Shown: piece by piece, positions 3,103 to 63,402 of the stretch
Layout of the letters: each line of letters opens with the position of its first letter
Position numbering within the stretch: position 1 is the first letter of the stretch
Virus record (IMG/VR): IMGVR_UViG_3300049793_000366
Location: 372,001 to 436,000 of that record
Direction: 5' to 3' (one strand)
DNA length: 64,000 bases
Notes under the pieces: model-generated
The model's input: only the letters and a program-made list of their open reading frames with translations
What the model was told of the DNA's origin: nothing
The model's database searches: none
Made by a program: the position numbers and the translations under genes

Positions 3103-4446
3103 ATGAAGTGGCTTAAAGAAAGAGATAAATTTAGTATGAACGAATCAGTCGTGGTAAAACACAACATACCAACATATGATGAGTGCGTTGAAATGTGCGC
3201 TCAGGAATCACCATGTTTCTATGAGACTAAGCTGGTTTTAGATGGATATAATATATCTGTCTTTAACTATCGTCTTGCTATGTATAGCGATTTCGTTAAA
3301 CCAATCGCAGATAAGCCACAAATCAAAGCATATGAAATGAGAGGATTAACTTTCGTCTTCAATGAAGATGGAACAATCTTTAATCGTTTCCTTTTACTTG
3401 AGAAGTTCTTTAACTTAAATCAAGTTCCAGAGTCTATGTATTCTATTGTTAAGAACTACAAAATAAAGTATGTTAATAACAAAGAAGATGGTTCTATTGC
3501 TTCATTTATCAAATTACCGAATGGTAAAATATACGGTAAGTCAAAGATGTCATTTGATAATGACCAAGCTGATGGTATCAACAGAGTTTACAAAACTAAT
3601 AAGCAAATCAAATCACTTGTTGATTGGTGCTTAGATAACGATATCGCGCCTATTTTTGAATATGTTGCACCACATAATAGAATAGTTCTTAGATACACAA
3701 CTGAGGACTTAATATTATTGCGTCTAAGAGACAATAAGACTGGTAGGCACATTGACTTAAAGGATCATTTAGATAAGATTGGTGAGATTAAAATCGCACC
3801 ATTTGAAGATGATTTCGATGGTCTTGACCACCTAATTGAATTAGTTGCAAAGCAAACTGATAAAGAGGGTTGTATTGTACAAGCTGTTGACGAAAATGGT
3901 CACGACTTCTTATTTAAGCTTAAAACACCATGGTATTGTGAGAGACACGGTTTATTGACTGAGGACTTATACCGTGAGCATATTATTATTGGTTATATCT
4001 TACAAGACAAAATTGATGATATTCTTGGACAAATCCCAGAAGAAGAGAAAGAGGCGCACGAAAGAATCAATAAAATCATCAAGATAGCCAAAAAAGCTAT
4101 TGCTGATAAAGAAGCTGAAATACTTGGTTTCTATCAAGTTTATTTAGATATGAATGATAGAAAAGCATTTGCATTAAAGTATCACAGACACCCGTTATTT
4201 GCTATGACTATGGCTTATGTTAAAGGTGTATATATGAAAACTCTTTCAAAAGAAGAGATTGCTGAAATGTACGAAGGTGACTTTGACCGTTTCGCTATGA
4301 TTCTTAATCAGTGCGAATCATATGAAATAGCTAAAGAATGGCTTAGAGAACAAACTAAGTGGTTGATGATGGCAAGAGATTGGCTTCAAGACAAAGACCC
4401 TACTTTATTTTTCATAGATCCTATCGAAAGTGATGAAGATAACTAA
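3103..4446 (+). CDS. RNA ligase, T4 Rnl1-like
   Basis: Motif I KEDGS, FEYVAPHNRIV, EGCIV, FKLKTPWY. Confidence 0.85.
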   Translation: MKWLKERDKFSMNESVVVKHNIPTYDECVEMCAQESPCFYETKLVLDGYNISVFNYRLAMYSDFVKPIADKPQIKAYEMRGLTFVFNEDGTIFNRFLLLEKFFNLNQVPESMYSIVKNYKIKYVNNKEDGSIASFIKLPNGKIYGKSKMSFDNDQADGINRVYKTNKQIKSLVDWCLDNDIAPIFEYVAPHNRIVLRYTTEDLILLRLRDNKTGRHIDLKDHLDKIGEIKIAPFEDDFDGLDHLIELVAKQTDKEGCIVQAVDENGHDFLFKLKTPWYCERHGLLTEDLYREHIIIGYILQDKIDDILGQIPEEEKEAHERINKIIKIAKKAIADKEAEILGFYQVYLDMNDRKAFALKYHRHPLFAMTMAYVKGVYMKTLSKEEIAEMYEGDFDRFAMILNQCESYEIAKEWLREQTKWLMMARDWLQDKDPTLFFIDPIESDEDN

Positions 4447-35697: not shown

Positions 35698-35771
35698 TGA
35701 GGGGTAGCTCAGTGGTAAGAGCGCCGGGACGGAAAACCCGGAGGTCGTTGGTTCGAATCTAACCCCCTCTA
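35698..35771 (+). tRNA. Initiator-like tRNA body with an 8-nt anticodon loop ACGGAAAA
   Basis: U1-U72 mismatch, GAGGGG/CCCCTC, CCGGG/CCCGG stem, AGGTC variable loop. Confidence 0.6.
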
Positions 35772-35779
35772 CAAAGAAT

Positions 35780-41010: not shown

Positions 41011-42282
41011 ATGCTACAACTAAACTACATTCGAGAAAATAAAGACGAAGTTATTAAACGTCTTGCTATTAAAAATTTAATAGATGCTGATGTCACAATC
41101 AATACACTTATTGATAAAGACAATGAGCGAAAAAGAATTAAGAAGGAAGGTGATGATACCAGAGGTGAACTTAATGCAATCACTGATACTATTCGTGATT
41201 TAGTAAAAGCTGGTAGGAAAGATGAAATAGCAAATGAGAAAGAGAAGACCACTAAGCTTAAACTAAAATTAGAAATGCTTGATGAAGCATTTAAGTTAAT
41301 AGATAGTGATATCTATGAAACACTAATTCGCCTACCAAACATTGCACACGAAAGTGTACCGAAAGGAAAAACACCAGAGGATAATGATATTATTTATGAG
41401 TATGGTGAAAAGCCAACTCTATACGATGGTGCTAAACCACATTGGGATTTAACTACAAAGTATAATCTGATTGACTTCGAATTAGGTGTTAAGATAGCTG
41501 GTGCTGGATTCCCTGTTTATAAAGACAAAGGAGCAAAATTACAAAGAGCTTTGATAAATTATTTTCTTGATAAAGCAACAGAGAATGGTTACATCGAAGT
41601 ACAACCACCAATTGTAGTAAATGAACAAAGTGGTTTTGGTACTGGTCAACTACCAGACAAAGAAGGTCAGATGTATCACATTGGTGAAGATAAGTTATAT
41701 TTAATACCAACTGCTGAAGTTCCTATTACAAATATCTATCGCGATGTTATATTAAACGAAGATGAATTACCAATTAAGAATTGTGGTTATACACCATGTT
41801 TCAGAAGAGAAGCGGGTAGTTATGGTAAAGATGTAAGAGGGTTAAATCGTTTACATCAATTTGATAAAGTAGAAATTGTACAAGTAGTTAAGCCAGAAAA
41901 TAGCTATCTTGCACTAGAAGAAATGCGCGAGTATGTAGCTCAGTTATTGAGAGAATTAGAACTACCATTTAGAACATTGAAATTATGTGGTGGTGACATG
42001 AGCTTCGCGAGTGCATTGACATATGATATGGAAGTATGGAGTGCGGCACAAGAAAAATGGTTAGAAGTAAGTAGTGTGAGTAACTTTGAAACATTTCAAA
42101 CAAATAGATTGAAGTGTAGATATAGAACAACAGATGGTAATAAATTACCACATACGTTAAATGGTAGTGCGTTAGCCTTACCAAGAATCGTAGCCGCTAT
42201 ACTTGAGAATAACCAAACAGAAGCGGGTATAAAAGTACCCAAAGTGCTAATACCATATACCAGATTTGAACTTATAAACTAA
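41011..42282 (+). CDS. serS: Seryl-tRNA synthetase, Bacteroidota-like
   Basis: GTGQLPDKEGQMY, LIPTAEVP, CFRREAGS, HQFDKVE, EVSSVSN, HTLNGSALALPR. Confidence 0.96.
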   Translation: MLQLNYIRENKDEVIKRLAIKNLIDADVTINTLIDKDNERKRIKKEGDDTRGELNAITDTIRDLVKAGRKDEIANEKEKTTKLKLKLEMLDEAFKLIDSDIYETLIRLPNIAHESVPKGKTPEDNDIIYEYGEKPTLYDGAKPHWDLTTKYNLIDFELGVKIAGAGFPVYKDKGAKLQRALINYFLDKATENGYIEVQPPIVVNEQSGFGTGQLPDKEGQMYHIGEDKLYLIPTAEVPITNIYRDVILNEDELPIKNCGYTPCFRREAGSYGKDVRGLNRLHQFDKVEIVQVVKPENSYLALEEMREYVAQLLRELELPFRTLKLCGGDMSFASALTYDMEVWSAAQEKWLEVSSVSNFETFQTNRLKCRYRTTDGNKLPHTLNGSALALPRIVAAILENNQTEAGIKVPKVLIPYTRFELIN

Positions 42283-52432: not shown

Positions 52433-53512
52433 ATGAAATTTGAAAAATTCCCACATACATTTACACTAACCAACGATAGAAAGTTACGTGTGAAATTCGG
52501 TATAGATCCTACATCAGATAAACTGCACTTAGGACATTTAATTCCTTTACAGCTCGTGAAAGAGTTCAAAGATGATGGTCACCAAATAGATATCATCTTA
52601 GGAACTTTCACGGCTCAAATGGGAGACCCGTCTGGTAAAGATACCATGCGACCTATACTAACACCAGAACAAACAAAAGCCAATGCTGAGTCAATCATTT
52701 CACAGTTGAGTAGAATATTAGGCGAAGGATTTAACATACACTTTAATCACACATGGTTTGAGTCTATGTCAATGCCACAAATGATGTCTATCATTTCTAA
52801 ATTCTCTGTTGGTAATTTACTAAGTCGAGATTCATTTCAGAATAGAATGGAAAATAATAACCCAATTGGTATGCACGAACTAATCGTACCTATCTTACAG
52901 GGATTTGATTCAGTTCAATTAAATTCTGATGTAGAGATTGGTGGCTCTGACCAACTATTCAATTTCAAAGTGAGTAGACAAATGCAAGAAGTATCTGGTC
53001 AAGCACCTGAGAATTGTTTTCTTATGCCAATTATAAATGGTACTGATGGTCGTAAGATGTCTAAGTCATTCAATAATTGTATATTCATAAACGATTCACC
53101 AGAAGATGTTTTTGGTAAAGCTATGTCTATATCAGATTCAACTATGTTTGAATGGTTGCCATTATTCTTTGAGACTATTGAGAAGCAACATCCGTTGAAG
53201 TTAAAAAAGATGTTAGCATTTAAGATAACAGAACTTATTTGGGGTAGTGAATCAGCAGAGAAGGGTAGAGAACACTTCGAATCTGTTATACAAGGTGATT
53301 CAATTCCGGATGATATTACAGAGATAAACAATAAGTTAATACTAGAAGTAGTACAAACTATGCGTAAGTCTTCTCGTTCTGAGGCACGTAGATTACTATT
53401 AGCAAATGCGGTTAAGGTAAATGGTCAAGTTGTTAATAGTGAAGAAACACAATTGAACACTGGTGATATTGTTAAAGTTGGTAAGAGAGATTTTGCTAAG
53501 ATTGCTTCGTAA
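52433..53512 (+). CDS. tyrS: Tyrosyl-tRNA synthetase
   Basis: GIDPTSDKLHLGH, LQGFDS, EIGGSDQLFN, KMSKS, C-terminal S4-like domain. Confidence 0.94.
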   Translation: MKFEKFPHTFTLTNDRKLRVKFGIDPTSDKLHLGHLIPLQLVKEFKDDGHQIDIILGTFTAQMGDPSGKDTMRPILTPEQTKANAESIISQLSRILGEGFNIHFNHTWFESMSMPQMMSIISKFSVGNLLSRDSFQNRMENNNPIGMHELIVPILQGFDSVQLNSDVEIGGSDQLFNFKVSRQMQEVSGQAPENCFLMPIINGTDGRKMSKSFNNCIFINDSPEDVFGKAMSISDSTMFEWLPLFFETIEKQHPLKLKKMLAFKITELIWGSESAEKGREHFESVIQGDSIPDDITEINNKLILEVVQTMRKSSRSEARRLLLANAVKVNGQVVNSEETQLNTGDIVKVGKRDFAKIAS

Positions 53513-57280: not shown

Positions 57281-57624
57281 GTTATATAGATCCAAATAGT
57301 AAAAGTAGTGAGATACAACCCACATCGATGGTTTATGTGAGTATTAACCCAATGAGTGGTGGTAAGCACATGAAATATGAATCAACAATCGTGATGAAGC
57401 TTGGTGGTATTGATAATGCTACCAACCTAAGTGAAATGGTTGATGAATACATATCAGTTTGTGAAATACAAAATGGGTTCTATGAAGACTATCATCGCAA
57501 TAGTTTAAGTGAACTACATAAAGCTTATGTTGCTAATAGCACAAGCAGAGCAATCGCACTAGAGAAGATGCGAGTTTTTTTAAAGGAACAAATAAGAAGA
57601 GAACAACTAAGAAAAATATTATGA
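57277..57624 (+). CDS. Hypothetical protein
   Basis: C-terminal RREQLRKIL. Confidence 0.55.
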   Translation: MSYIDPNSKSSEIQPTSMVYVSINPMSGGKHMKYESTIVMKLGGIDNATNLSEMVDEYISVCEIQNGFYEDYHRNSLSELHKAYVANSTSRAIALEKMRVFLKEQIRREQLRKIL

Positions 57625-58328
57625 AAACATTAAATAACTGGAGAGTAGCTCCTGATTATCCAAGAATACCACATCTATCTAAAGACATTTCAAATATGTC
57701 GAATGATGATATTGTGTTAGATACTGCTACATTTCCATTCACAGCAGACTATCAAGAAAAAGTAGATGGTGCCAACTTAGGTATCTCTTGGAACAATGAT
57801 GGTCCCGTTGTACGAAATAGAAACTTCGTATTGAATAAAGGCTATACTAAAACCAAAACACCATCTAAAAGACAATTCGTTAATACATGGCAGTGGATTC
57901 ACAAACACGAAGATGATATCAAAGAAGTCATTGATAGATGGATGGCACCACTGACAATCTATGGTGAGTGGATGTGGGCTAAACATTCGATAGAATATAA
58001 TAAGCTACCAGACTTATTCTTAGCTTATGATATTTGGTCTCCATTAGATAATAAATTCGTATCTGTTAGTAAGATGGAAGAATTGCTTGATGGTACAAAC
58101 ATTAGGTATATCCCATCAATCAGAAAAGAGTTTAAAACTATTAGCGATGTTAAGCAAACATCAGAGTTGAAGTCTAAATATACGGATGATTATGCAGAGG
58201 GTATAGTAATCAAAATTTGCTCAGAAAGATGGGTTGAGAAAACATACAAGGTTGTCAATCAGTTCTACAACAGAAGAGACGATTTCAATGATGTAGATAT
58301 TATCCGGAATAAGGTGCTTGATATTTAA
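57621..58328 (+). CDS. Second ATP-dependent RNA ligase (Rnl2/Rnl3-like nucleotidyltransferase domain)
   Basis: YPRIPHL, QEKVDGANLGI, YGEW, AYDI, EGIVIK, YKVV. Confidence 0.82.
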   Translation: MKTLNNWRVAPDYPRIPHLSKDISNMSNDDIVLDTATFPFTADYQEKVDGANLGISWNNDGPVVRNRNFVLNKGYTKTKTPSKRQFVNTWQWIHKHEDDIKEVIDRWMAPLTIYGEWMWAKHSIEYNKLPDLFLAYDIWSPLDNKFVSVSKMEELLDGTNIRYIPSIRKEFKTISDVKQTSELKSKYTDDYAEGIVIKICSERWVEKTYKVVNQFYNRRDDFNDVDIIRNKVLDI

Positions 58329-58384: not shown

Positions 58385-58909
58385 ATGAGAAAGCAGAAAC
58401 AGCAACTACATAGACTCAACAATCAAATCACACACGAAACAGTGAGAGTGATATCTGATGAGAATGGACAGAGGTTATCAACTGTAATGTCAATAAATGA
58501 GGCACTGCAATTAGCAGATAGTCTTGCTGTTGATTTAGTAGAGGTAACACCTAATGCTAACCCACCTATTTGTAGAGTTGTGGAGTATGGTAAATTCCTT
58601 TATGAGTTAAAGAAAAAGGAAAAAGAAAACTCTAAGAAATCTCAACAACAAGAAGTTAAAGAGTTAAGACTAACCCCTCACACTGATGAACATGACTTCG
58701 AGTTTAAGCTAAAACACGCAGAGGCTTGGCTTAAGAAAGGAGATAAAGTAAAAGCTACTGTCTTCTTCAAAGGAAGAGAAATAGTTTACCAGGATCAAGG
58801 TAGAGTACTTTTGCTTAAATTAGCTGATACATTAAAGGATATTTCAAAGGCTGAGAGTTTACCTATTCTGATGGGTAAACGAATGTCGATAACGATATCA
58901 CCTAAATAA
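58385..58909 (+). CDS. infC: Translation initiation factor IF-3
   Basis: DLVEVTPNANPPICRVVEYGKFLYE, KELRL, GDKVK, GRE. Confidence 0.95.
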   Translation: MRKQKQQLHRLNNQITHETVRVISDENGQRLSTVMSINEALQLADSLAVDLVEVTPNANPPICRVVEYGKFLYELKKKEKENSKKSQQQEVKELRLTPHTDEHDFEFKLKHAEAWLKKGDKVKATVFFKGREIVYQDQGRVLLLKLADTLKDISKAESLPILMGKRMSITISPK

Positions 58910-59476: not shown

Positions 59477-59549
59477 GGCGCTGTCGTCTACTGGAAGGAC
59501 GCTACTTTGTTCAAAGTGGAAACATACGGTTCGAATCCTATCGGCGCTA
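59477..59549 (+). tRNA. Glu-like tRNA-like RNA with extended anticodon arm and bulged T stem
   Basis: GGCGCTG/CGGCGCT; CTACTTT-GTTC-AAAGTGG; ATA[C]GG/CCTAT. Confidence 0.55.
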
Positions 59550-59665
59550 CAAATGTTAAAAGTTAGAAAAATATTTAAACTTCTCTAAACTTTTAAAAAC
59601 TCAAAGATTATAACATATAACTTTGTACAACATAACAAGCAAAGTAAATAAAAAACAAAAGAAAA

Positions 59666-59938
59666 ATGAATAAAGCTGAATTAATTGATGTTATTGCGAA
59701 AGAAGCAAACTTAACAAAAACATCCGCTACACAAGCGTTAGACGCAACTCTTGCTGCTATCACTAGCTCTTTGAGCAATGGCGACAAGGTAACACTTGTA
59801 GGTTTTGGTACATTTTCAGTTTCTAAGAGAGCAGCCCGCAAAGGTCGCAATCCAAAAACTGGTGAAGTAATCCAAATCTCTGCAAAGAATGTTGCAAAGT
59901 TCAAAGCTGGTTCTGAGTTATCTTCTTCAGTGAAGTAA
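59666..59938 (+). CDS. hup: HU family DNA-binding protein
   Basis: [34 protein letters not shown]. Confidence 0.96.
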
Positions 59939-59986
59939 TTTAAAATCACGCGAGAGTTGATTCCAAAAGAGTAAACTCTCGTACAT

Positions 59987-60060
59987 GGCGCAATCGTCTA
60001 CCGGAAGGACGCTACCCCATTTCAGGGTAGAAACGTATGGTTCGAATCCTGCTTGCGCTA
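59987..60060 (+). tRNA. Glu-like tRNA-like RNA with 6-bp anticodon stem and bulged T stem
   Basis: GGCGCAA/TTGCGCT; CTACCC-CATTTCA-GGGTAG; GTA[T]GG/CCTGC. Confidence 0.6.
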
Positions 60061-60069
60061 CAATGTGCC

Positions 60070-60460
60070 AATCTCGGTTGGCTTCTCAGTGAGGTGAACA
60101 CTGTGCTATATATGAGAAGTTGTTGTCAACTTTTATAACTAAAAAACACATTGCGTTCATTTTAATACGGCAAATTTTCACTGGTTAAAAACCGAGCGTA
60201 AATGTCTTGTAACGTAAGAGCTTAATAAATTGGGTGGAAGATACGCCGCCAAGTATTGAGTTAAACACATTAAGTTGTGTGAGTCGATGCGAACAAAAAG
60301 GTCCAGTAGTTAGACTGCCTTTAAGGTTTATGATTCATAATAGAATTATATTCTTTACTGAAAATGAATACACAACTAGGCCTGTGGTTGAGGAAGTTGA
60401 ACATCGATTAGATGTGAGAGTCTCCGAAATGTATTCAACAGTTCAAAAAGCTCTTACTTA
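60070..60460 (+). ncRNA. Unidentified structured RNA, about 400 nt
   Basis: Long-range pairs CTCGGTT/AACCGAG, GTAAGAGCTT/AAGCTCTTAC, GAATAC/GTATTC, GCTTCTCA/TGAGAAGT, plus many hairpins. Confidence 0.55.
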
Positions 60461-60490
60461 GCTTGTTTATAAGTAAAATTATTATAAGTT

Positions 60491-60500
60491 CGTTCTTTGA
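60491..60500 (+). promoter_or_regulatory. Putative boxA
   Basis: CGTTCTTTGA just before the large ncRNA. Confidence 0.45.
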
Positions 60501-60518
60501 TTTAAAAATTTAAAAATA

Positions 60519-61272
60519 TTGGGCAGTATAGTGTCCTACACAAATCTTCGGGTTTGTGTGAAAATAAAGCTGGTAACAGTCTATAAAGCAAACGTAGAGT
60601 TTGCGACTTCTTCACGGGAGTTTAACTATAAAATACTTAGTATGTCTTTGATGGACGAATGTTCAATGAGATATCATCATCCAACTATGGTGATTGCGTC
60701 AGAAATGATTACAAGAAAGGTAGGGTATTATGTGCGAAATGTCCAAACATTAGTGCGTGTGCTATCTGATTAAGTTATACAACGTATAGTTTATATTCGC
60801 AAGGGTATTTATTATACATGGGCGACTGAAGCAGACGTGAGCTGGAAACTCACAGAAGGGCGTTTAGTATTTTGTTCTCAAAAGGAACGAAGCTATACCA
60901 CACAGGCGTCCTTCATACAAATAGTTGTTATCTAACATGATTTTGAAATATCAAAAAAGCAAAATCTGTGTGGCGCTGGAGTCGAAAGGTCTCTAATTCC
61001 ATCCGTTGCGAAACGAAGATGGAGTCTAATATCCCGCAAGGATATGGATTTAGCTAAGAAAAATCTAGTGGGCGCAACCCTTAGTCAGTTCGCAAGACTG
61101 AATAGACAGAGTAGCAGTTGAGTAGACAAACTGGTCAAACAGTTCTAGCGATACGAGTGATTACCGTAAGGAATCGAGACTGACAGAATACTTATCGCAA
61201 GGTGAGTGGATAATGAGAGAACCAATAATGCTCAGAAAGATTTGTCGACCAAAGCTATAATCTCAAGCTTTT
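60519..61272 (+). ncRNA. Large ornate ncRNA, GOLLD-like (about 750 nt)
   Basis: Five CGCAA-loop hairpins, UUCG/GCGA/GAAA loops, long-range helices (GAAGGGCG/CGTCCTTC, CACACAG/CTGTGTG); tRNA-flanked phage context; family call is from memory. Confidence 0.6.
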
Positions 61273-61276
61273 TTAC

Positions 61277-61350
61277 GGCGTGTTCGTCTATCGGAAGGAC
61301 GCTACCCCATTTCAGGGTAGAAACGTATGGTTCGAATCCTGCACACGCTA
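61277..61350 (+). tRNA. Glu-like tRNA-like RNA, near copy of 59987-60060
   Basis: Identical from GGAAGGAC through the T arm; acceptor GGCGTGT/ACACGCT co-varies. Confidence 0.6.
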
Positions 61351-61368
61351 CTGAGTAAAATAAAATAT

Positions 61369-61481
61369 GGCGAGTTCTTCTAGCGGACTAAGCTGAACAA
61401 CGCACTTCTACTGTGTTATTCGCTTAAAGGATGCCGTTCTTTTCAGAATGGAGACAGCAGGTTCGAATCCTCTACTCGCTA
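61369..61481 (+). tRNA. tRNA-like RNA of the same family with a hairpin inserted in the D loop
   Basis: GGCGAGT/ACTCGCT; CCGTTCT-TTTC-AGAATGG; AG[C]AGG/CCTCT; about 35-nt D-loop insert. Confidence 0.5.
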
Positions 61482-61530
61482 CAAACAGTAATGCCAAGTT
61501 TTCCAGACTCTTTTATTGTTTACCATGAAG

Positions 61531-61562
61531 AAGCCGATGTGATTTATCATATCGGTTTTTTT
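61531..61562 (+). terminator. Intrinsic terminator ending the ncRNA operon
   Basis: aagccgatgtga-tt-tatcatatcggtt + T tract. Confidence 0.75.
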
Positions 61563-61563
61563 A

Positions 61564-61595
61564 TTTGGTCATGTCCGGAATTATGATTATATTTG
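61564..61595 (+). promoter_or_regulatory. Bacteroidota-type promoter
   Basis: TTTG 61564-61567, TATATTTG 61588-61595. Confidence 0.72.
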
Positions 61596-61635
61596 TAACT
61601 GAATAATTTTTTTCACTTAAAACCAAAAAACAAAC

Positions 61636-63402
61636 ATGAAAGTATTTGCAATTATCTTATCACTAATCCTTGGTTGGTTATGTTATTATTTCGGAATGCC
61701 AACATTATCATTCGGCTTCATTGGATGGCCATCAACATTAATGGTAATGTCTATTCCACTTATTCTACTTGATGTAGAAGAACGAGAAGGTATGTTTAAA
61801 ACAGGAGTGGGTATAGCAGTCTTTGGTTTGTTTTTCTTAACCATTGTACCGATGCTTACAAGTTGGTCACTATTTCGCTCTGACGCATATAAATCATTAC
61901 TTGGTACAGTAAACGAAAAGAGTATAAACTCCACAATTGAACCTATCAATCCTGAGAATATTGTAATAATTGATGAACAAACAGCACATCGATTAGCTGA
62001 TAAATGCTTAAATGAATATCCGGATGCTCGTGCTATTGGTTCAGAAGTTGAACTTGGTTCACTTACACTACAAAAAGTTGGTGATAAGATGTACTATGTT
62101 GCTCCGCTATTACACCGCTCATTCTTTAAGTGGTCTTCTAACTCACAGGGTACACCAGGTTATGTTATGATTAACACAACGAATGACAAAGATGTTAAGT
62201 TTGTACAAGAAGTAAATGGTAAAAAACTACGCATTAAATATCAAGAGGGTGCCTGCTTTGGTGATAATATAGAACGACACATTTATACATCTGGTTATAA
62301 AACAAAAGGAGTATCAGATTATTCTTTTGAAGTTGATGATAATGGTACACCTTATTACATCGCCACTATATATGAGAAACAAGTTGGATATGCTGGTGAA
62401 GATGCTACTGGTGTTATAACGGTTGATGTTGCCTCTGGTGAGATTACAGAATACTCAGTAAAAGAAACACCTACATGGATTGATAGAATTTACCCAGTTG
62501 ACTTTATTAAGACACAGGTTGATGATTGGGGTTATTTCTCACATGGTTGGTTAAATCCATCTGACAAAGATAGGTTAGAGTCAACTGATGGTATATCGTT
62601 AGTATATGGTAATGATGGTCAGTGCTACTTCTATTGTGGTTTAACATCTGTTGGTAAGGATCAATCATCTATTGGATTTTTAATGATAAACTCTCGAACT
62701 AAGGAAGTTAATTACTATCATCAAGGTGGTGCTACCGAACAAGCCGCTATGGCATCTGCTGAGGGTAAAGTACAAGAGAAAGGTTATGCCGCAAGTCACC
62801 CAAGACCATATAACATTGATGGTATATGGACATATGTTATGGCTCTGAAAGATAAAGAGGGATTAATCAAAATGGTTGCTCTGGTATCAGTTAAGAATTA
62901 TGATATCGTTGGTGTTGGTCAAGACATAAAAGACGCTATACGTCAATACAAATCAGCTTTAAACTCAAGTGGTAACGTCACTACATTTGAAGGTAAGAAG
63001 TCAGACTTTGAAGTAACTGGTAAGATAACCCGATTCTCTGTTGATAATCGAAGTGGTAACTCTTATTACTATTTTATGATTGATACTATTAAAACTAAAA
63101 TATTCGTAGCAACATCCAATATATCTGATGAAGTAGTTTTAACACAGCTTAATGATATAGCAACTGTAACGTTTGCTGATGCTAATTCATATCTTATTGA
63201 TGTAAGAACCTTTGATAATAAGGGACTGAGCTTATCTAAGAGCGAAAGTCAGAATAAAGTTGAAAAATATTTTAAAACAGTTAACGATTCAATTAGTATA
63301 AAGCAAGACGCAAATGATGCAAATGCTTTATGGGACACATTGAGTGAATCTAAAAAAGCTGAAATTTTGAAATCATATCAAAAGACAAACACTAAAAAGT
63401 AA
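61636..63402 (+). CDS. Membrane-anchored hypothetical protein
   Basis: N-terminal hydrophobic helices followed by a large soluble domain. Confidence 0.7.
   Translation: MKVFAIILSLILGWLCYYFGMPTLSFGFIGWPSTLMVMSIPLILLDVEEREGMFKTGVGIAVFGLFFLTIVPMLTSWSLFRSDAYKSLLGTVNEKSINSTIEPINPENIVIIDEQTAHRLADKCLNEYPDARAIGSEVELGSLTLQKVGDKMYYVAPLLHRSFFKWSSNSQGTPGYVMINTTNDKDVKFVQEVNGKKLRIKYQEGACFGDNIERHIYTSGYKTKGVSDYSFEVDDNGTPYYIATIYEKQVGYAGEDATGVITVDVASGEITEYSVKETPTWIDRIYPVDFIKTQVDDWGYFSHGWLNPSDKDRLESTDGISLVYGNDGQCYFYCGLTSVGKDQSSIGFLMINSRTKEVNYYHQGGATEQAAMASAEGKVQEKGYAASHPRPYNIDGIWTYVMALKDKEGLIKMVALVSVKNYDIVGVGQDIKDAIRQYKSALNSSGNVTTFEGKKSDFEVTGKITRFSVDNRSGNSYYYFMIDTIKTKIFVATSNISDEVVLTQLNDIATVTFADANSYLIDVRTFDNKGLSLSKSESQNKVEKYFKTVNDSISIKQDANDANALWDTLSESKKAEILKSYQKTNTKK

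What the first reader, a model, noticed from the sequence alone, without database searches (positions are those of the whole stretch)
60519..61272. GOLLD-like giant ornate RNA
About 750 nt with no credible ORF, dense with GNRA/UUCG hairpins and long-range helices, located between tRNA-like genes. This matches the size and context of GOLLD RNA, whose function is unknown. The family assignment is from memory.
Basis: partly seen in the sequence, partly recalled or inferred. Interest (0 to 1): 0.62.

Follow-up and report, generated by a model that had tools for sequence, protein, structure and literature searches.

The report
GOLLD RNA gene in giant phage

Summary
Window 60520-61271 (+) is a complete GOLLD RNA gene. 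Rfam's GOLLD model (RF02032) matches 60855-61269 end to end at 232 bits (threshold 150, E 1e-64). The 335 nt before it (60520-60854) are a shortened, diverged copy of the usual GOLLD 5' domain.

I found three further lineages of the same RNA, 72-87% identical, in syntenic metagenome contigs. Across them, 49 of 200 base pairs change on both sides and stay paired, against 2-7 in slid controls. The only sizeable ORF (84 aa) is broken by stops in every relative.

A tRNA-like element starts 5 nt after the last GOLLD hairpin, and another lies 458 nt upstream.

The host record is a 507,910-bp virus cut from a 711,805-bp soil contig. The gene sits at the end of a translation island with 39 tRNAs, aminoacyl-tRNA synthetases, IF3 and RNA ligases.

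Three local features go beyond the known family:
- Flanking tRNA-like elements that lack an anticodon loop.
- A separate, unclassified structured RNA of about 400 nt at 60062-60460.
- A hairpin inserted into the 3' domain.

Verdict: a new member of a known kind, of modest interest.

The parts
60490..60500 (+). Conserved 11-mer TCGTTCTTTGA, 20 nt before the first GOLLD hairpin. Candidate promoter or 5' leader element.
   Evidence: It is identical in all four GOLLD-bearing lineages, inside an otherwise unconserved A/T-rich spacer. It occurs once in the 507,910-bp record. Its function is inferred.
60520..60854 (+). GOLLD 5' domain. It is 335 nt, against about 416 nt in the commonest class, and folds as a chain of about 15 local hairpins that includes an invariant GAAA loop at 60702-60705.
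   Evidence: All relatives share its start. A profile of this domain hits the 5' domain of L119, a member of the common class, at E 9.8e-6. The class-A profile aligns weakly at 60511-60624. The window's own predicted pairs are kept in relatives at 86%, with 19 pairs changed on both sides.
60855..61271 (+). GOLLD 3' domain, the conserved ring-forming part of the RNA.
   Evidence: Rfam RF02032 matches 60855-61269 at 232.2 bits over model 1-416/416. Of 112 pairs, 91.8% are canonical and 25 changed on both sides in relatives.
60915..60965 (+). A/U-rich variable linker inside the 3' domain. It holds no tRNA here.
   Evidence: It aligns to the unstructured model positions of about 64-127 at low posterior probability. 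Sequence varies among relatives. ARAGORN finds nothing in it.
60898..60905 (+). 5' strand of an 8-bp pairing (CCACACAG) that closes the linker. It lies in the internal loop of the first 3'-domain hairpin.
   Evidence: It pairs with 60966-60973. Cells are 100% canonical, and 3 of 8 pairs changed on both sides across lineages. The Rfam consensus letters at the same places are also complementary (read by eye).
60966..60973 (+). 3' strand (CUGUGUGG) of the linker-closing pairing.
61130..61143 (+). Lineage-specific hairpin inserted into the 3' strand of the long-range helix (60974-83 with 61125-27 and 61144-50).
   Evidence: cmscan shows a 14-nt insertion here relative to the family model. The stem covaries: ACUG/CAGU in the window, CCAC/GUGG in L125, CCC/GGG in L133. 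The resumed helix has 3 of 7 pairs changed on both sides.
61277..61350 (+). tRNA-like element T3, 5 nt after the last GOLLD hairpin. Proposed RNase P site that makes the GOLLD 3' end.
   Evidence: Rfam tRNA scores 39.9 bits. The cloverleaf is kept, but the anticodon arm is abnormal. L122 has the same arrangement. Cleavage is inferred.
59987..60060 (+). tRNA-like element T2, a paralogue of T3 (91% identical).
59477..59549 (+). tRNA-like element T1. T1 and T2 bracket the HU gene (59666-59938).
   Evidence: It has a 7-bp stem with a GUUC tetraloop in place of an anticodon arm.
61369..61481 (+). tRNA-like element T4, with an insertion of about 40 nt in the D region.
60062..60460 (+). UP element, a separate conserved structured RNA-like module between T2 and the GOLLD leader. 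It is not part of GOLLD.
   Evidence: Fold z = -3.4. It is conserved in the window, L122 and L133, with 22 of 81 predicted pairs changed on both sides against 2-6 in slid controls. It is absent from the L125 lineage, which keeps GOLLD, and partly present in L128, which lacks GOLLD. It has no Rfam match.

Best explanation
Window 60520-61271 (+) is a functional gene for a GOLLD RNA of about 752 nt, carried by a very large soil phage.

Shown here: it matches the family model over its whole length. It has the family's two-domain layout: a 5' domain at 60520-60854, a 3' domain at 60855-61271, and a floppy A/U-rich linker at 60915-60965. Its helices are kept by compensatory changes in three other lineages.

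Inferred, with my odds:
(a) The RNA starts a few bases after a conserved 11-mer at 60490-60500, either from its own promoter or as a processed leader (about 0.5).
(b) Its 3' end is made when RNase P cuts at the 5' end of the abutting tRNA-like element at 61276/61277 (about 0.5).
(c) Like the solved GOLLD env-38, it assembles with copies of itself into a closed RNA-only cage (about 0.7).
(d) During lytic growth the cage serves the phage's take-over of translation, for example by holding or scaffolding tRNAs or ribosome-related factors, given that the gene closes a 42-kb island of tRNAs, synthetases, IF3 and RNA ligases (about 0.25; the biological role of GOLLD is unknown in the literature).
For: Identity: RF02032 scores 232.2 bits against a threshold of 150, over model 1-416/416, E 1.4e-64, and it is the only copy in the record. 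Relatives score 203-231 bits.

Structure under selection: six sequences from four lineages are 72-87% identical. Of 200 pairs, 93.7% are canonical and 49 changed on both sides, against about 38% and 2-7 when the partner is slid by 1-3 columns. A non-circular check of the 5' domain gives 86% and 19 pairs. RNAalifold found 38 compensatory pairs.

5' domain homology: the profile hit to L119 has E 9.8e-6, and L119 belongs to the main 5' class at E about 1e-47.

Not coding.

3' processing: T3 starts 5 nt after the terminal hairpin. L122 keeps a tRNA-like element 3 nt after the aligned end. In 19 of 48 other GOLLD loci, about 7 sequence groups, ARAGORN calls a tRNA 14-50 nt downstream.

Cage: PMC12286853 reports a D7 14-mer for GOLLD env-38, with the 5' domain as cap and the 3' domain as ring.

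Context: 39 tRNAs in the window; TyrRS and a second synthetase-like gene, IF3 and two RNA ligases.
Against: No RNA data exist. None of the sequencing runs that hold this DNA is on record as RNA, so expression, both ends and processing are untested.

The 5' domain is about 80 nt shorter than the common class and is barely recognisable by sequence. A cage of the same stoichiometry is therefore not assured.

The conserved 11-mer does not fit the Bacteroidota -7 motif TAnnTTTG (recalled from my own knowledge), because the TA is missing, and the sigma-70 scan found no promoter there.

In two of the four lineages (L125, L133) the next tRNA or tRNA-like element lies 260-400 nt downstream rather than abutting. 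RNase P trimming at the very end is therefore not universal.

The syntenic relative L128 lacks GOLLD altogether, so the RNA is dispensable for this phage type.
Confidence: 0.85

Rival explanations
1. The functional RNA is larger than GOLLD proper. On this view the conserved structured module upstream (60062-60460) and GOLLD form one composite RNA of about 1.2 kb, released between the tRNA-like elements T2 and T3.
For: Both lie on the same strand and are contiguous, with no terminator-like site between them. The G>C skew runs without a break from about 60150 to 61300. UP folds better than shuffles (z -3.4) and covaries. It begins exactly at the 3' end of T2, and GOLLD ends at T3.
Against: The L125/L129-132 lineage has GOLLD and the conserved 11-mer but no UP, with only 98 nt between T2 and GOLLD. 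L128 keeps the first 130 nt or so of UP without GOLLD. L133 carries an extra 345 nt before UP. A poorly conserved A/T-rich spacer and the conserved 11-mer separate the two modules. No helix joining UP to GOLLD was seen.
Confidence: 0.12
2. It is a decaying GOLLD remnant with no present function, kept only because it was acquired recently.
For: The 5' domain is shortened. One syntenic relative (L128) has lost or never had the RNA.
Against: Four lineages that diverged to 72% identity keep 94% of pairs canonical, with 49 pairs changed on both sides. All model helices are present and the match is full length. Loop motifs (UUCG, GAAA, GCAA) and junction blocks are invariant.
Confidence: 0.02
3. The region encodes a small protein (the 84-aa ORF at 60519-60773, or the 75-aa ORF at 60234-60461), and the RNA structure is incidental.
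For: Both ORFs exist under table 11.
Against: Neither ORF has a Pfam or PHROG match, and by eye neither has a ribosome-binding site. The 84-aa frame has stops in L122, L125 and L133. The 75-aa ORF region has indels of 10, 21 and 22 nt in L122.
Confidence: 0.01
4. The GOLLD 3' end is set by termination at the terminal hairpin and its U run (61251-61274), not by RNase P. The tRNA-like element would then be transcribed separately.
For: The terminal hairpin is followed by UUUUUU in the window.
Against: The stem is weak (6 pairs, 2 of them G-C, with a 9-nt loop), and half of the U run is itself paired. The terminator scan found no such site on the + strand in 59500-61800. The U run is not conserved: L125 reads UUUA.
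Confidence: 0.15

Closest known systems
GOLLD RNA (Rfam RF02032; Weinberg et al. 2009; cryo-EM of env-38 in Kretsch et al. 2025, PMC12286853)
   Same: The match to the conserved 3' domain is full length. The RNA has two domains and an internal variable linker. GNRA and UUCG loops are abundant. It is phage-borne, sits next to tRNA genes, and lies on the same strand as the tRNA array. A GC dinucleotide sits in the loop that I map to L21a, and a conserved GAAA loop sits in the 5' domain.
   Different: The 5' domain is 335 nt against about 416-420. Profiles of the two common 5' classes do not find it, and it is linked to them only through L119. A hairpin is inserted into the long-range helix of the 3' domain. 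The flanking elements are tRNA-like but lack anticodon loops. The carrier is a soil virus record of 0.5 Mb from a 0.71-Mb contig; my paper searches surfaced no report of GOLLD in huge phages, though only 15 of 200 hits were listed.
ROOL RNA (phage and prophage, forms an 8-mer RNA cage)
   Same: It is a large ornate phage RNA near tRNA islands that forms a cage (PMC12286853).
   Different: No Rfam match to ROOL at E<=1 in 59900-61600. According to that paper its sequence and fold are unrelated to GOLLD.
tRNA-like processing signals: mascRNA at the MALAT1 3' end, and t-elements of plant mitochondria (PMC1920247)
   Same: A cloverleaf that cannot decode sits directly at the end of a long non-coding RNA, or brackets an mRNA. 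Here T3 follows GOLLD, and T1 and T2 bracket HU. RNase P or RNase Z could use such elements to cut.
   Different: Those systems are eukaryotic or organellar and have been tested experimentally. Here the role is inferred from position, shape and conservation alone.

Membership tests
GOLLD RNA (RF02032) | Covariance-model score above the curated gathering score, over the whole model | tested here: met
   232.2 bits against 150; model 1-416/416; E 1.4e-64.
GOLLD RNA (RF02032) | The helices of the 3' domain are maintained by compensatory substitutions | tested here: met
   112 pairs, mostly mapped from the Rfam consensus: 91.8% canonical, 25 pairs changed on both sides, against 35-43% and 0-2 in slid controls.
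GOLLD RNA (RF02032) | A separate, less conserved 5' domain of several hundred nt, homologous to that of other GOLLD RNAs | tested here: met
   The profile of the window-type domain hits the L119 5' domain at E 9.8e-6 over 209 positions, and L119 is in the main class. The direct class-A alignment is weak (E 0.002 in a one-sequence database). The domain covaries.
GOLLD RNA (RF02032) | A variable, unstructured linker after the first hairpin of the 3' domain | tested here: met
   60915-60965 is A/U-rich, aligns poorly and varies among relatives. Two other loci (L091, L102) carry a tRNA at this place, as the literature describes.
GOLLD RNA (RF02032) | Phage or prophage location near tRNA genes | tested here: met
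   The source is a virus record. The window holds 39 tRNAs and phage-type genes.
GOLLD RNA (RF02032) | Loops that bridge chains in the cage: a self-complementary GC/CG in L21a and a conserved L21b | tested here: inconclusive
   The loop at 61073-61077 (CGCAA) holds GC. The next loop, at 61091-61095, is also CGCAA rather than the consensus around CCGG. I matched loop names to model positions by counting, and did not check the match against the env-38 sequence.
GOLLD RNA (RF02032) | Self-assembly into a homo-14-mer cage | not testable with these tools
   This needs in vitro transcription followed by mass photometry or cryo-EM.
GOLLD RNA (RF02032) | Expression that rises during lytic growth | not testable with these tools
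   None of the sequencing runs that hold this DNA is on record as RNA, and all four runs laid were assembled contigs.
ROOL RNA | Match to the family covariance model | tested here: not met
   No match at E<=1 in 59900-61600, or at gathering score in the whole window.
tRNA (for the flanking elements T1-T4) | Cloverleaf with acceptor, D and T arms | tested here: met
   T2 and T3 score 39.6 and 39.9 bits against a threshold of 29. The consensus fold of 11 copies is a cloverleaf whose acceptor stems covary.
tRNA (for the flanking elements T1-T4) | A 7-nt anticodon loop with U33 and a purine at position 37 | tested here: not met
   Most copies have a 7-bp stem capped by a 4-nt loop (GUUC, UUUC or AUUC). 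T2 and T3 of the window have the loop CAUUUCA, with A33 and C37. They should not be filed as decoding tRNAs.

The most novel reading that the evidence does not exclude
In this clade of giant soil phages, GOLLD may be one cassette in a transcript punctuated by tRNA-like elements. Cloverleafs without anticodon loops (T1-T4) would serve as RNase P/Z cutting signals. They would release three products: the HU mRNA, an unclassified structured RNA of about 400 nt (UP), and GOLLD. The shortened 5' cap domain and the inserted hairpin might also give a cage whose stoichiometry differs from the 14-mer solved so far.
Probability: 0.25. Interest if true: 0.6.

Novelty: new member of a known kind. Interest (0 to 1): 0.33.

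Why it matters
GOLLD is among the largest bacterial or phage non-coding RNAs. It is now known to build an RNA-only cage, yet its function is still unknown.

This member adds four things:
- A carrier of a different kind: a soil virus of at least 0.5 Mb, probably infecting Bacteroidota, whose GOLLD closes a large island of translation genes.
- A naturally compact 5' domain and an inserted hairpin, which make it a useful natural variant for testing which parts cage assembly needs.
- A natural presence/absence pair, since the syntenic relative L128 lacks the RNA.
- A concrete, testable route for making the 3' end, through an abutting tRNA-like element.

None of this changes what GOLLD is, so the finding is useful rather than surprising.

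Tried and rejected
- blastn of 60062-61276 against 50,697 phage records found no match.
- The search for related loci with the downstream 588-aa protein found no relative in IMG/VR.
- Three window-specific DNA patterns found nothing in IMG/VR. The single metagenome scan returned only copies of the L133/L134 lineage.
- Single-sequence nhmmer of the 5' region found nothing among 119 viral loci, and blastn clustering left it a singleton. Class B and class C 5'-domain profiles gave no credible alignment.
- No RNA-seq run holds the locus, and the runs laid were contigs, so they could not show RNA ends.
- The L20_leader match at 61449-61570 (23 bits against a threshold of 58.7, E 0.1) is chance.
- RNAalifold on the full alignment proposed three long-range helices joining the 5' and 3' domains (columns 19-23/743-747, 203-211/731-739 and 411-418/704-711). 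I rejected them because they conflict with the family's own helices and show little or no compensatory change: one pair in the first helix, none in the other two.
- The sigma-70 scan gave no more sites than shuffles, and the terminator scan found no site on the + strand.
- The T-family profile finds no convincing copies near GOLLD in other viral loci, nor elsewhere in this record.
- I did not use the count of structure pairs, to avoid typing a 778-character structure string. The same counts were computed by script.

Full report
**What is there.** Rfam's GOLLD model (RF02032) matches window 60855-61269 on the + strand at 232.2 bits. The gathering score is 150, E is 1.4e-64, and the match covers model positions 1-416 of 416. 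It is the only copy in the source record. That model covers only the conserved 3' half of GOLLD. [quoted passage not shown] The open question was therefore what lies between the upstream tRNA-like element, which ends at 60060, and 60855.

**Where the RNA starts.** A pattern scan of IMG/VR returned 119 loci, and iterated nhmmer found 48 GOLLD 3' domains among them. Their upstream regions fall into two main 5'-domain classes, A with 26 loci and B with 16, plus a pair. The window's upstream region matched none of these at normal thresholds. The class-A profile did align weakly at 60511-60624, starting with the hairpin GGGCA-GUAUAG-UGUCC, which mirrors the first class-A hairpin.

Closer relatives settled the point. 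Homologues of the neighbouring HU protein led to syntenic metagenome contigs, which fall into three further lineages:
- L121-124, whose GOLLD is 87% identical to the window's.
- L125/126 and L129-132, at 72%.
- L133/134 and L137-139, at 72%.

All of them score 203-231 bits on RF02032. In every one, similarity to the window's 5' domain begins at the position equivalent to 60520. A profile built from these 5' domains hits the 5' domain of L119 at E 9.8e-6 over 209 positions. L119 is the window's nearest 3'-domain relative in IMG/VR and a member of class A.

So 60520-60854 is a diverged and shortened canonical 5' domain, 335 nt against about 416. The whole RNA is 60520-61271, about 752 nt.

**Is the structure real?** The 754-nt stretch folds 4.1 standard deviations better than dinucleotide shuffles. 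The alignment of six sequences from four lineages has 85% mean column identity.

I mapped most of the 3'-domain helices from the Rfam consensus, which is independent of these sequences. I took the 5'-domain helices from RNAalifold run on the 5' columns only.
- Of the 200 pairs, 93.7% of cells are canonical and 49 pairs changed on both sides while staying paired.
- With the 3' partner slid by 1-3 columns, the figures are 37-41% and 2-7.
- The 5'-domain structure came from the same alignment, so I repeated the count with the window's single-sequence MFE pairs, judged only in the relatives. That gave 86% canonical and 19 compensatory pairs, against 35-39% and 1-10.

The only sizeable ORF (84 aa, TTG start, 60519-60773) has no family match and is interrupted by stops in all three other lineages.

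**Local anatomy.** Four features stand out.
- An 8-bp pairing joins the internal loop of the first 3'-domain hairpin (60898-60905) to the segment just after the linker (60966-60973). It covaries in 3 of 8 pairs and closes the A/U-rich linker 60915-60965 into a loop. The Rfam consensus letters at those places are also complementary. I could not verify whether this is the pseudoknot described in the literature.
- In this lineage the long-range helix of the 3' domain is interrupted by an inserted hairpin at 61130-61143. The hairpin itself covaries, and cmscan shows it as a 14-nt insertion.
- The 5' domain keeps an invariant GAAA loop at 60702-60705. It aligns with a GAAA loop of L119.
- The loop that I map to L21a (61073-61077) contains GC, the self-complementary dinucleotide reported to bridge chains in the cage. 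I mapped loop names by counting model positions, so this remains unverified.

**Ends and neighbours.** Four paralogous tRNA-like elements lie around the RNA and nowhere else in the record:
- T1 at 59477-59549.
- T2 at 59987-60060.
- T3 at 61277-61350.
- T4 at 61369-61481.

Across lineages they fold as cloverleafs with covarying acceptor stems. Where the anticodon arm should be, most have a 7-bp stem with a 4-nt loop. T2 and T3 of the window have the loop CAUUUCA, with A33 and C37. They cannot decode.

T3 begins 5 nt after the last GOLLD hairpin, and L122 keeps the same arrangement. In 19 of 48 other GOLLD loci, about seven sequence groups, a normal tRNA follows within 14-50 nt. From this I infer that RNase P cleavage at the tRNA or tRNA-like 5' end commonly makes the GOLLD 3' end. 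This is not shown, and in the L125 and L133 lineages the next tRNA lies 260-400 nt away.

Upstream, an 11-mer (TCGTTCTTTGA, 60490-60500) is identical in all four lineages within an otherwise unconserved spacer. It is unique in the genome. It is a candidate promoter or leader element.

**The module at 60062-60460 is separate.** It is structured (z -3.4) and conserved with compensatory changes in three lineages. It is missing from the L125 lineage, which keeps GOLLD, and it is partly present in L128, which has the same gene order but no GOLLD. It has no Rfam family.

**Carrier.** The window is bases 372001-436000 of a 507,910-bp IMG/VR record labelled provirus, 97% complete, with an even 33% G+C. 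The record carries 60 ARAGORN tRNA calls (one of them T2), a tmRNA and a CUA-anticodon suppressor tRNA. It corresponds to the last 507,910 bp of a 711,805-bp soil-metagenome contig. A relative's HU gene lies on a 709,085-bp contig.

The window itself carries T4-type topoisomerase II, two RNA ligases, TyrRS, a second synthetase-like gene, IF3 and 39 tRNAs. GOLLD closes this translation island. The closest named HU homologues are from Bacteroidota, mostly Chitinophagaceae, which hints at the host.

**How it most likely works.** Identity and selection on the fold are shown. By homology with env-38, whose 5' domains form the cap and whose 3' domains form the ring of a D7 14-mer (PMC12286853), I expect self-assembly into an RNA cage. 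The shorter 5' domain leaves the stoichiometry open.

The biological role is unknown in the literature. The authors of that paper suggest encapsulation of tRNAs, ribosomes or other molecules. The position of this copy, at the end of a tRNA, synthetase and IF3 island, fits a role in translation take-over but does not prove one.

**Verdict.** This is a new member of a known family, with some lineage-specific features and interesting neighbours.

Noticed in passing
window 59477-59549, 59987-60060, 61277-61350, 61369-61481: A clade-specific family of four tRNA-like cloverleafs with a G1.U72 acceptor stem, normal D and T arms and a conserved ACAA tail. The anticodon arm is replaced by a 7-bp stem with an NUUC tetraloop, or by a CAUUUCA loop in T2 and T3. 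They bracket the HU gene and GOLLD in all related lineages. They may act as RNase P/Z punctuation signals.
   Followed up: partly
window 60062-60460: An unclassified structured RNA-like module (UP) that starts directly after T2. A helix joining 60214-60232 to 60439-60457 closes a multi-hairpin domain. It is conserved with compensatory changes in three lineages, absent in one GOLLD-bearing lineage, and has no Rfam match. It may be a new non-coding RNA.
   Followed up: partly
L128:3821-6221: A syntenic relative with the order RNA ligase, IF3, T, HU, T, then the 588-aa protein has no GOLLD. Two called genes occupy the place instead. GOLLD is therefore an accessory cassette in this phage group, and this gives a natural presence/absence pair.
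   Followed up: partly
whole record G000 (window = G000:C1:372001-436000): The 507,910-bp 'provirus' record is the terminal part of a 711,805-bp soil contig. G+C is an even 33% throughout the record. A relative's HU gene lies on a 709,085-bp contig. The true genome may be about 0.71 Mb, which by my recollection is near the largest phage genomes reported. The 204 kb left out were not examined.
   Followed up: partly
G000:C1:121630-121702 and 59956-60348; window 35698-35772: The record holds a suppressor-type tRNA with anticodon CUA, a tmRNA, and tRNAs that ARAGORN reads with irregular anticodon loops (a 4-base GGAA in the window, and a 2-base loop at G000 321617). ORFs in the window look intact under table 11, so I assumed no recoding.
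   Followed up: no
window 19760-58909: A translation island: 38 tRNA genes in seven clusters, TyrRS (52433-53512), a second synthetase-like gene (41011-42282), IF3 (58385-58909) and RNA ligases (3103-4446, which lies before the island, and 57621-58328). GOLLD lies at its downstream end.
   Followed up: partly
L113:4989-5396, L085:861-1249, L002:5276-5693, L119:11344-11427, L091 and L102: In other viral contigs, GOLLD lies within about 130 nt to 1.2 kb of a tmRNA gene (three class-A loci) or about 470 nt from a small SRP RNA (L119). Two loci carry a tRNA inside the GOLLD linker.
   Followed up: no
class-A GOLLD loci, about 100-400 nt upstream of the RNA (for example L049, L075, L095): An element of about 70 nt is repeated 2-3 times upstream of GOLLD. 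It contains TTG, a spacer, then TATCTTTG, which resembles the Bacteroidota -33/-7 promoter (motif from my own knowledge). It may mark stacked promoters.
   Followed up: no
L133:3318-3663: About 345 nt of extra G+C-richer sequence lie between the T2 element and the UP module in the L133 lineage only. I did not analyse it.
   Followed up: no
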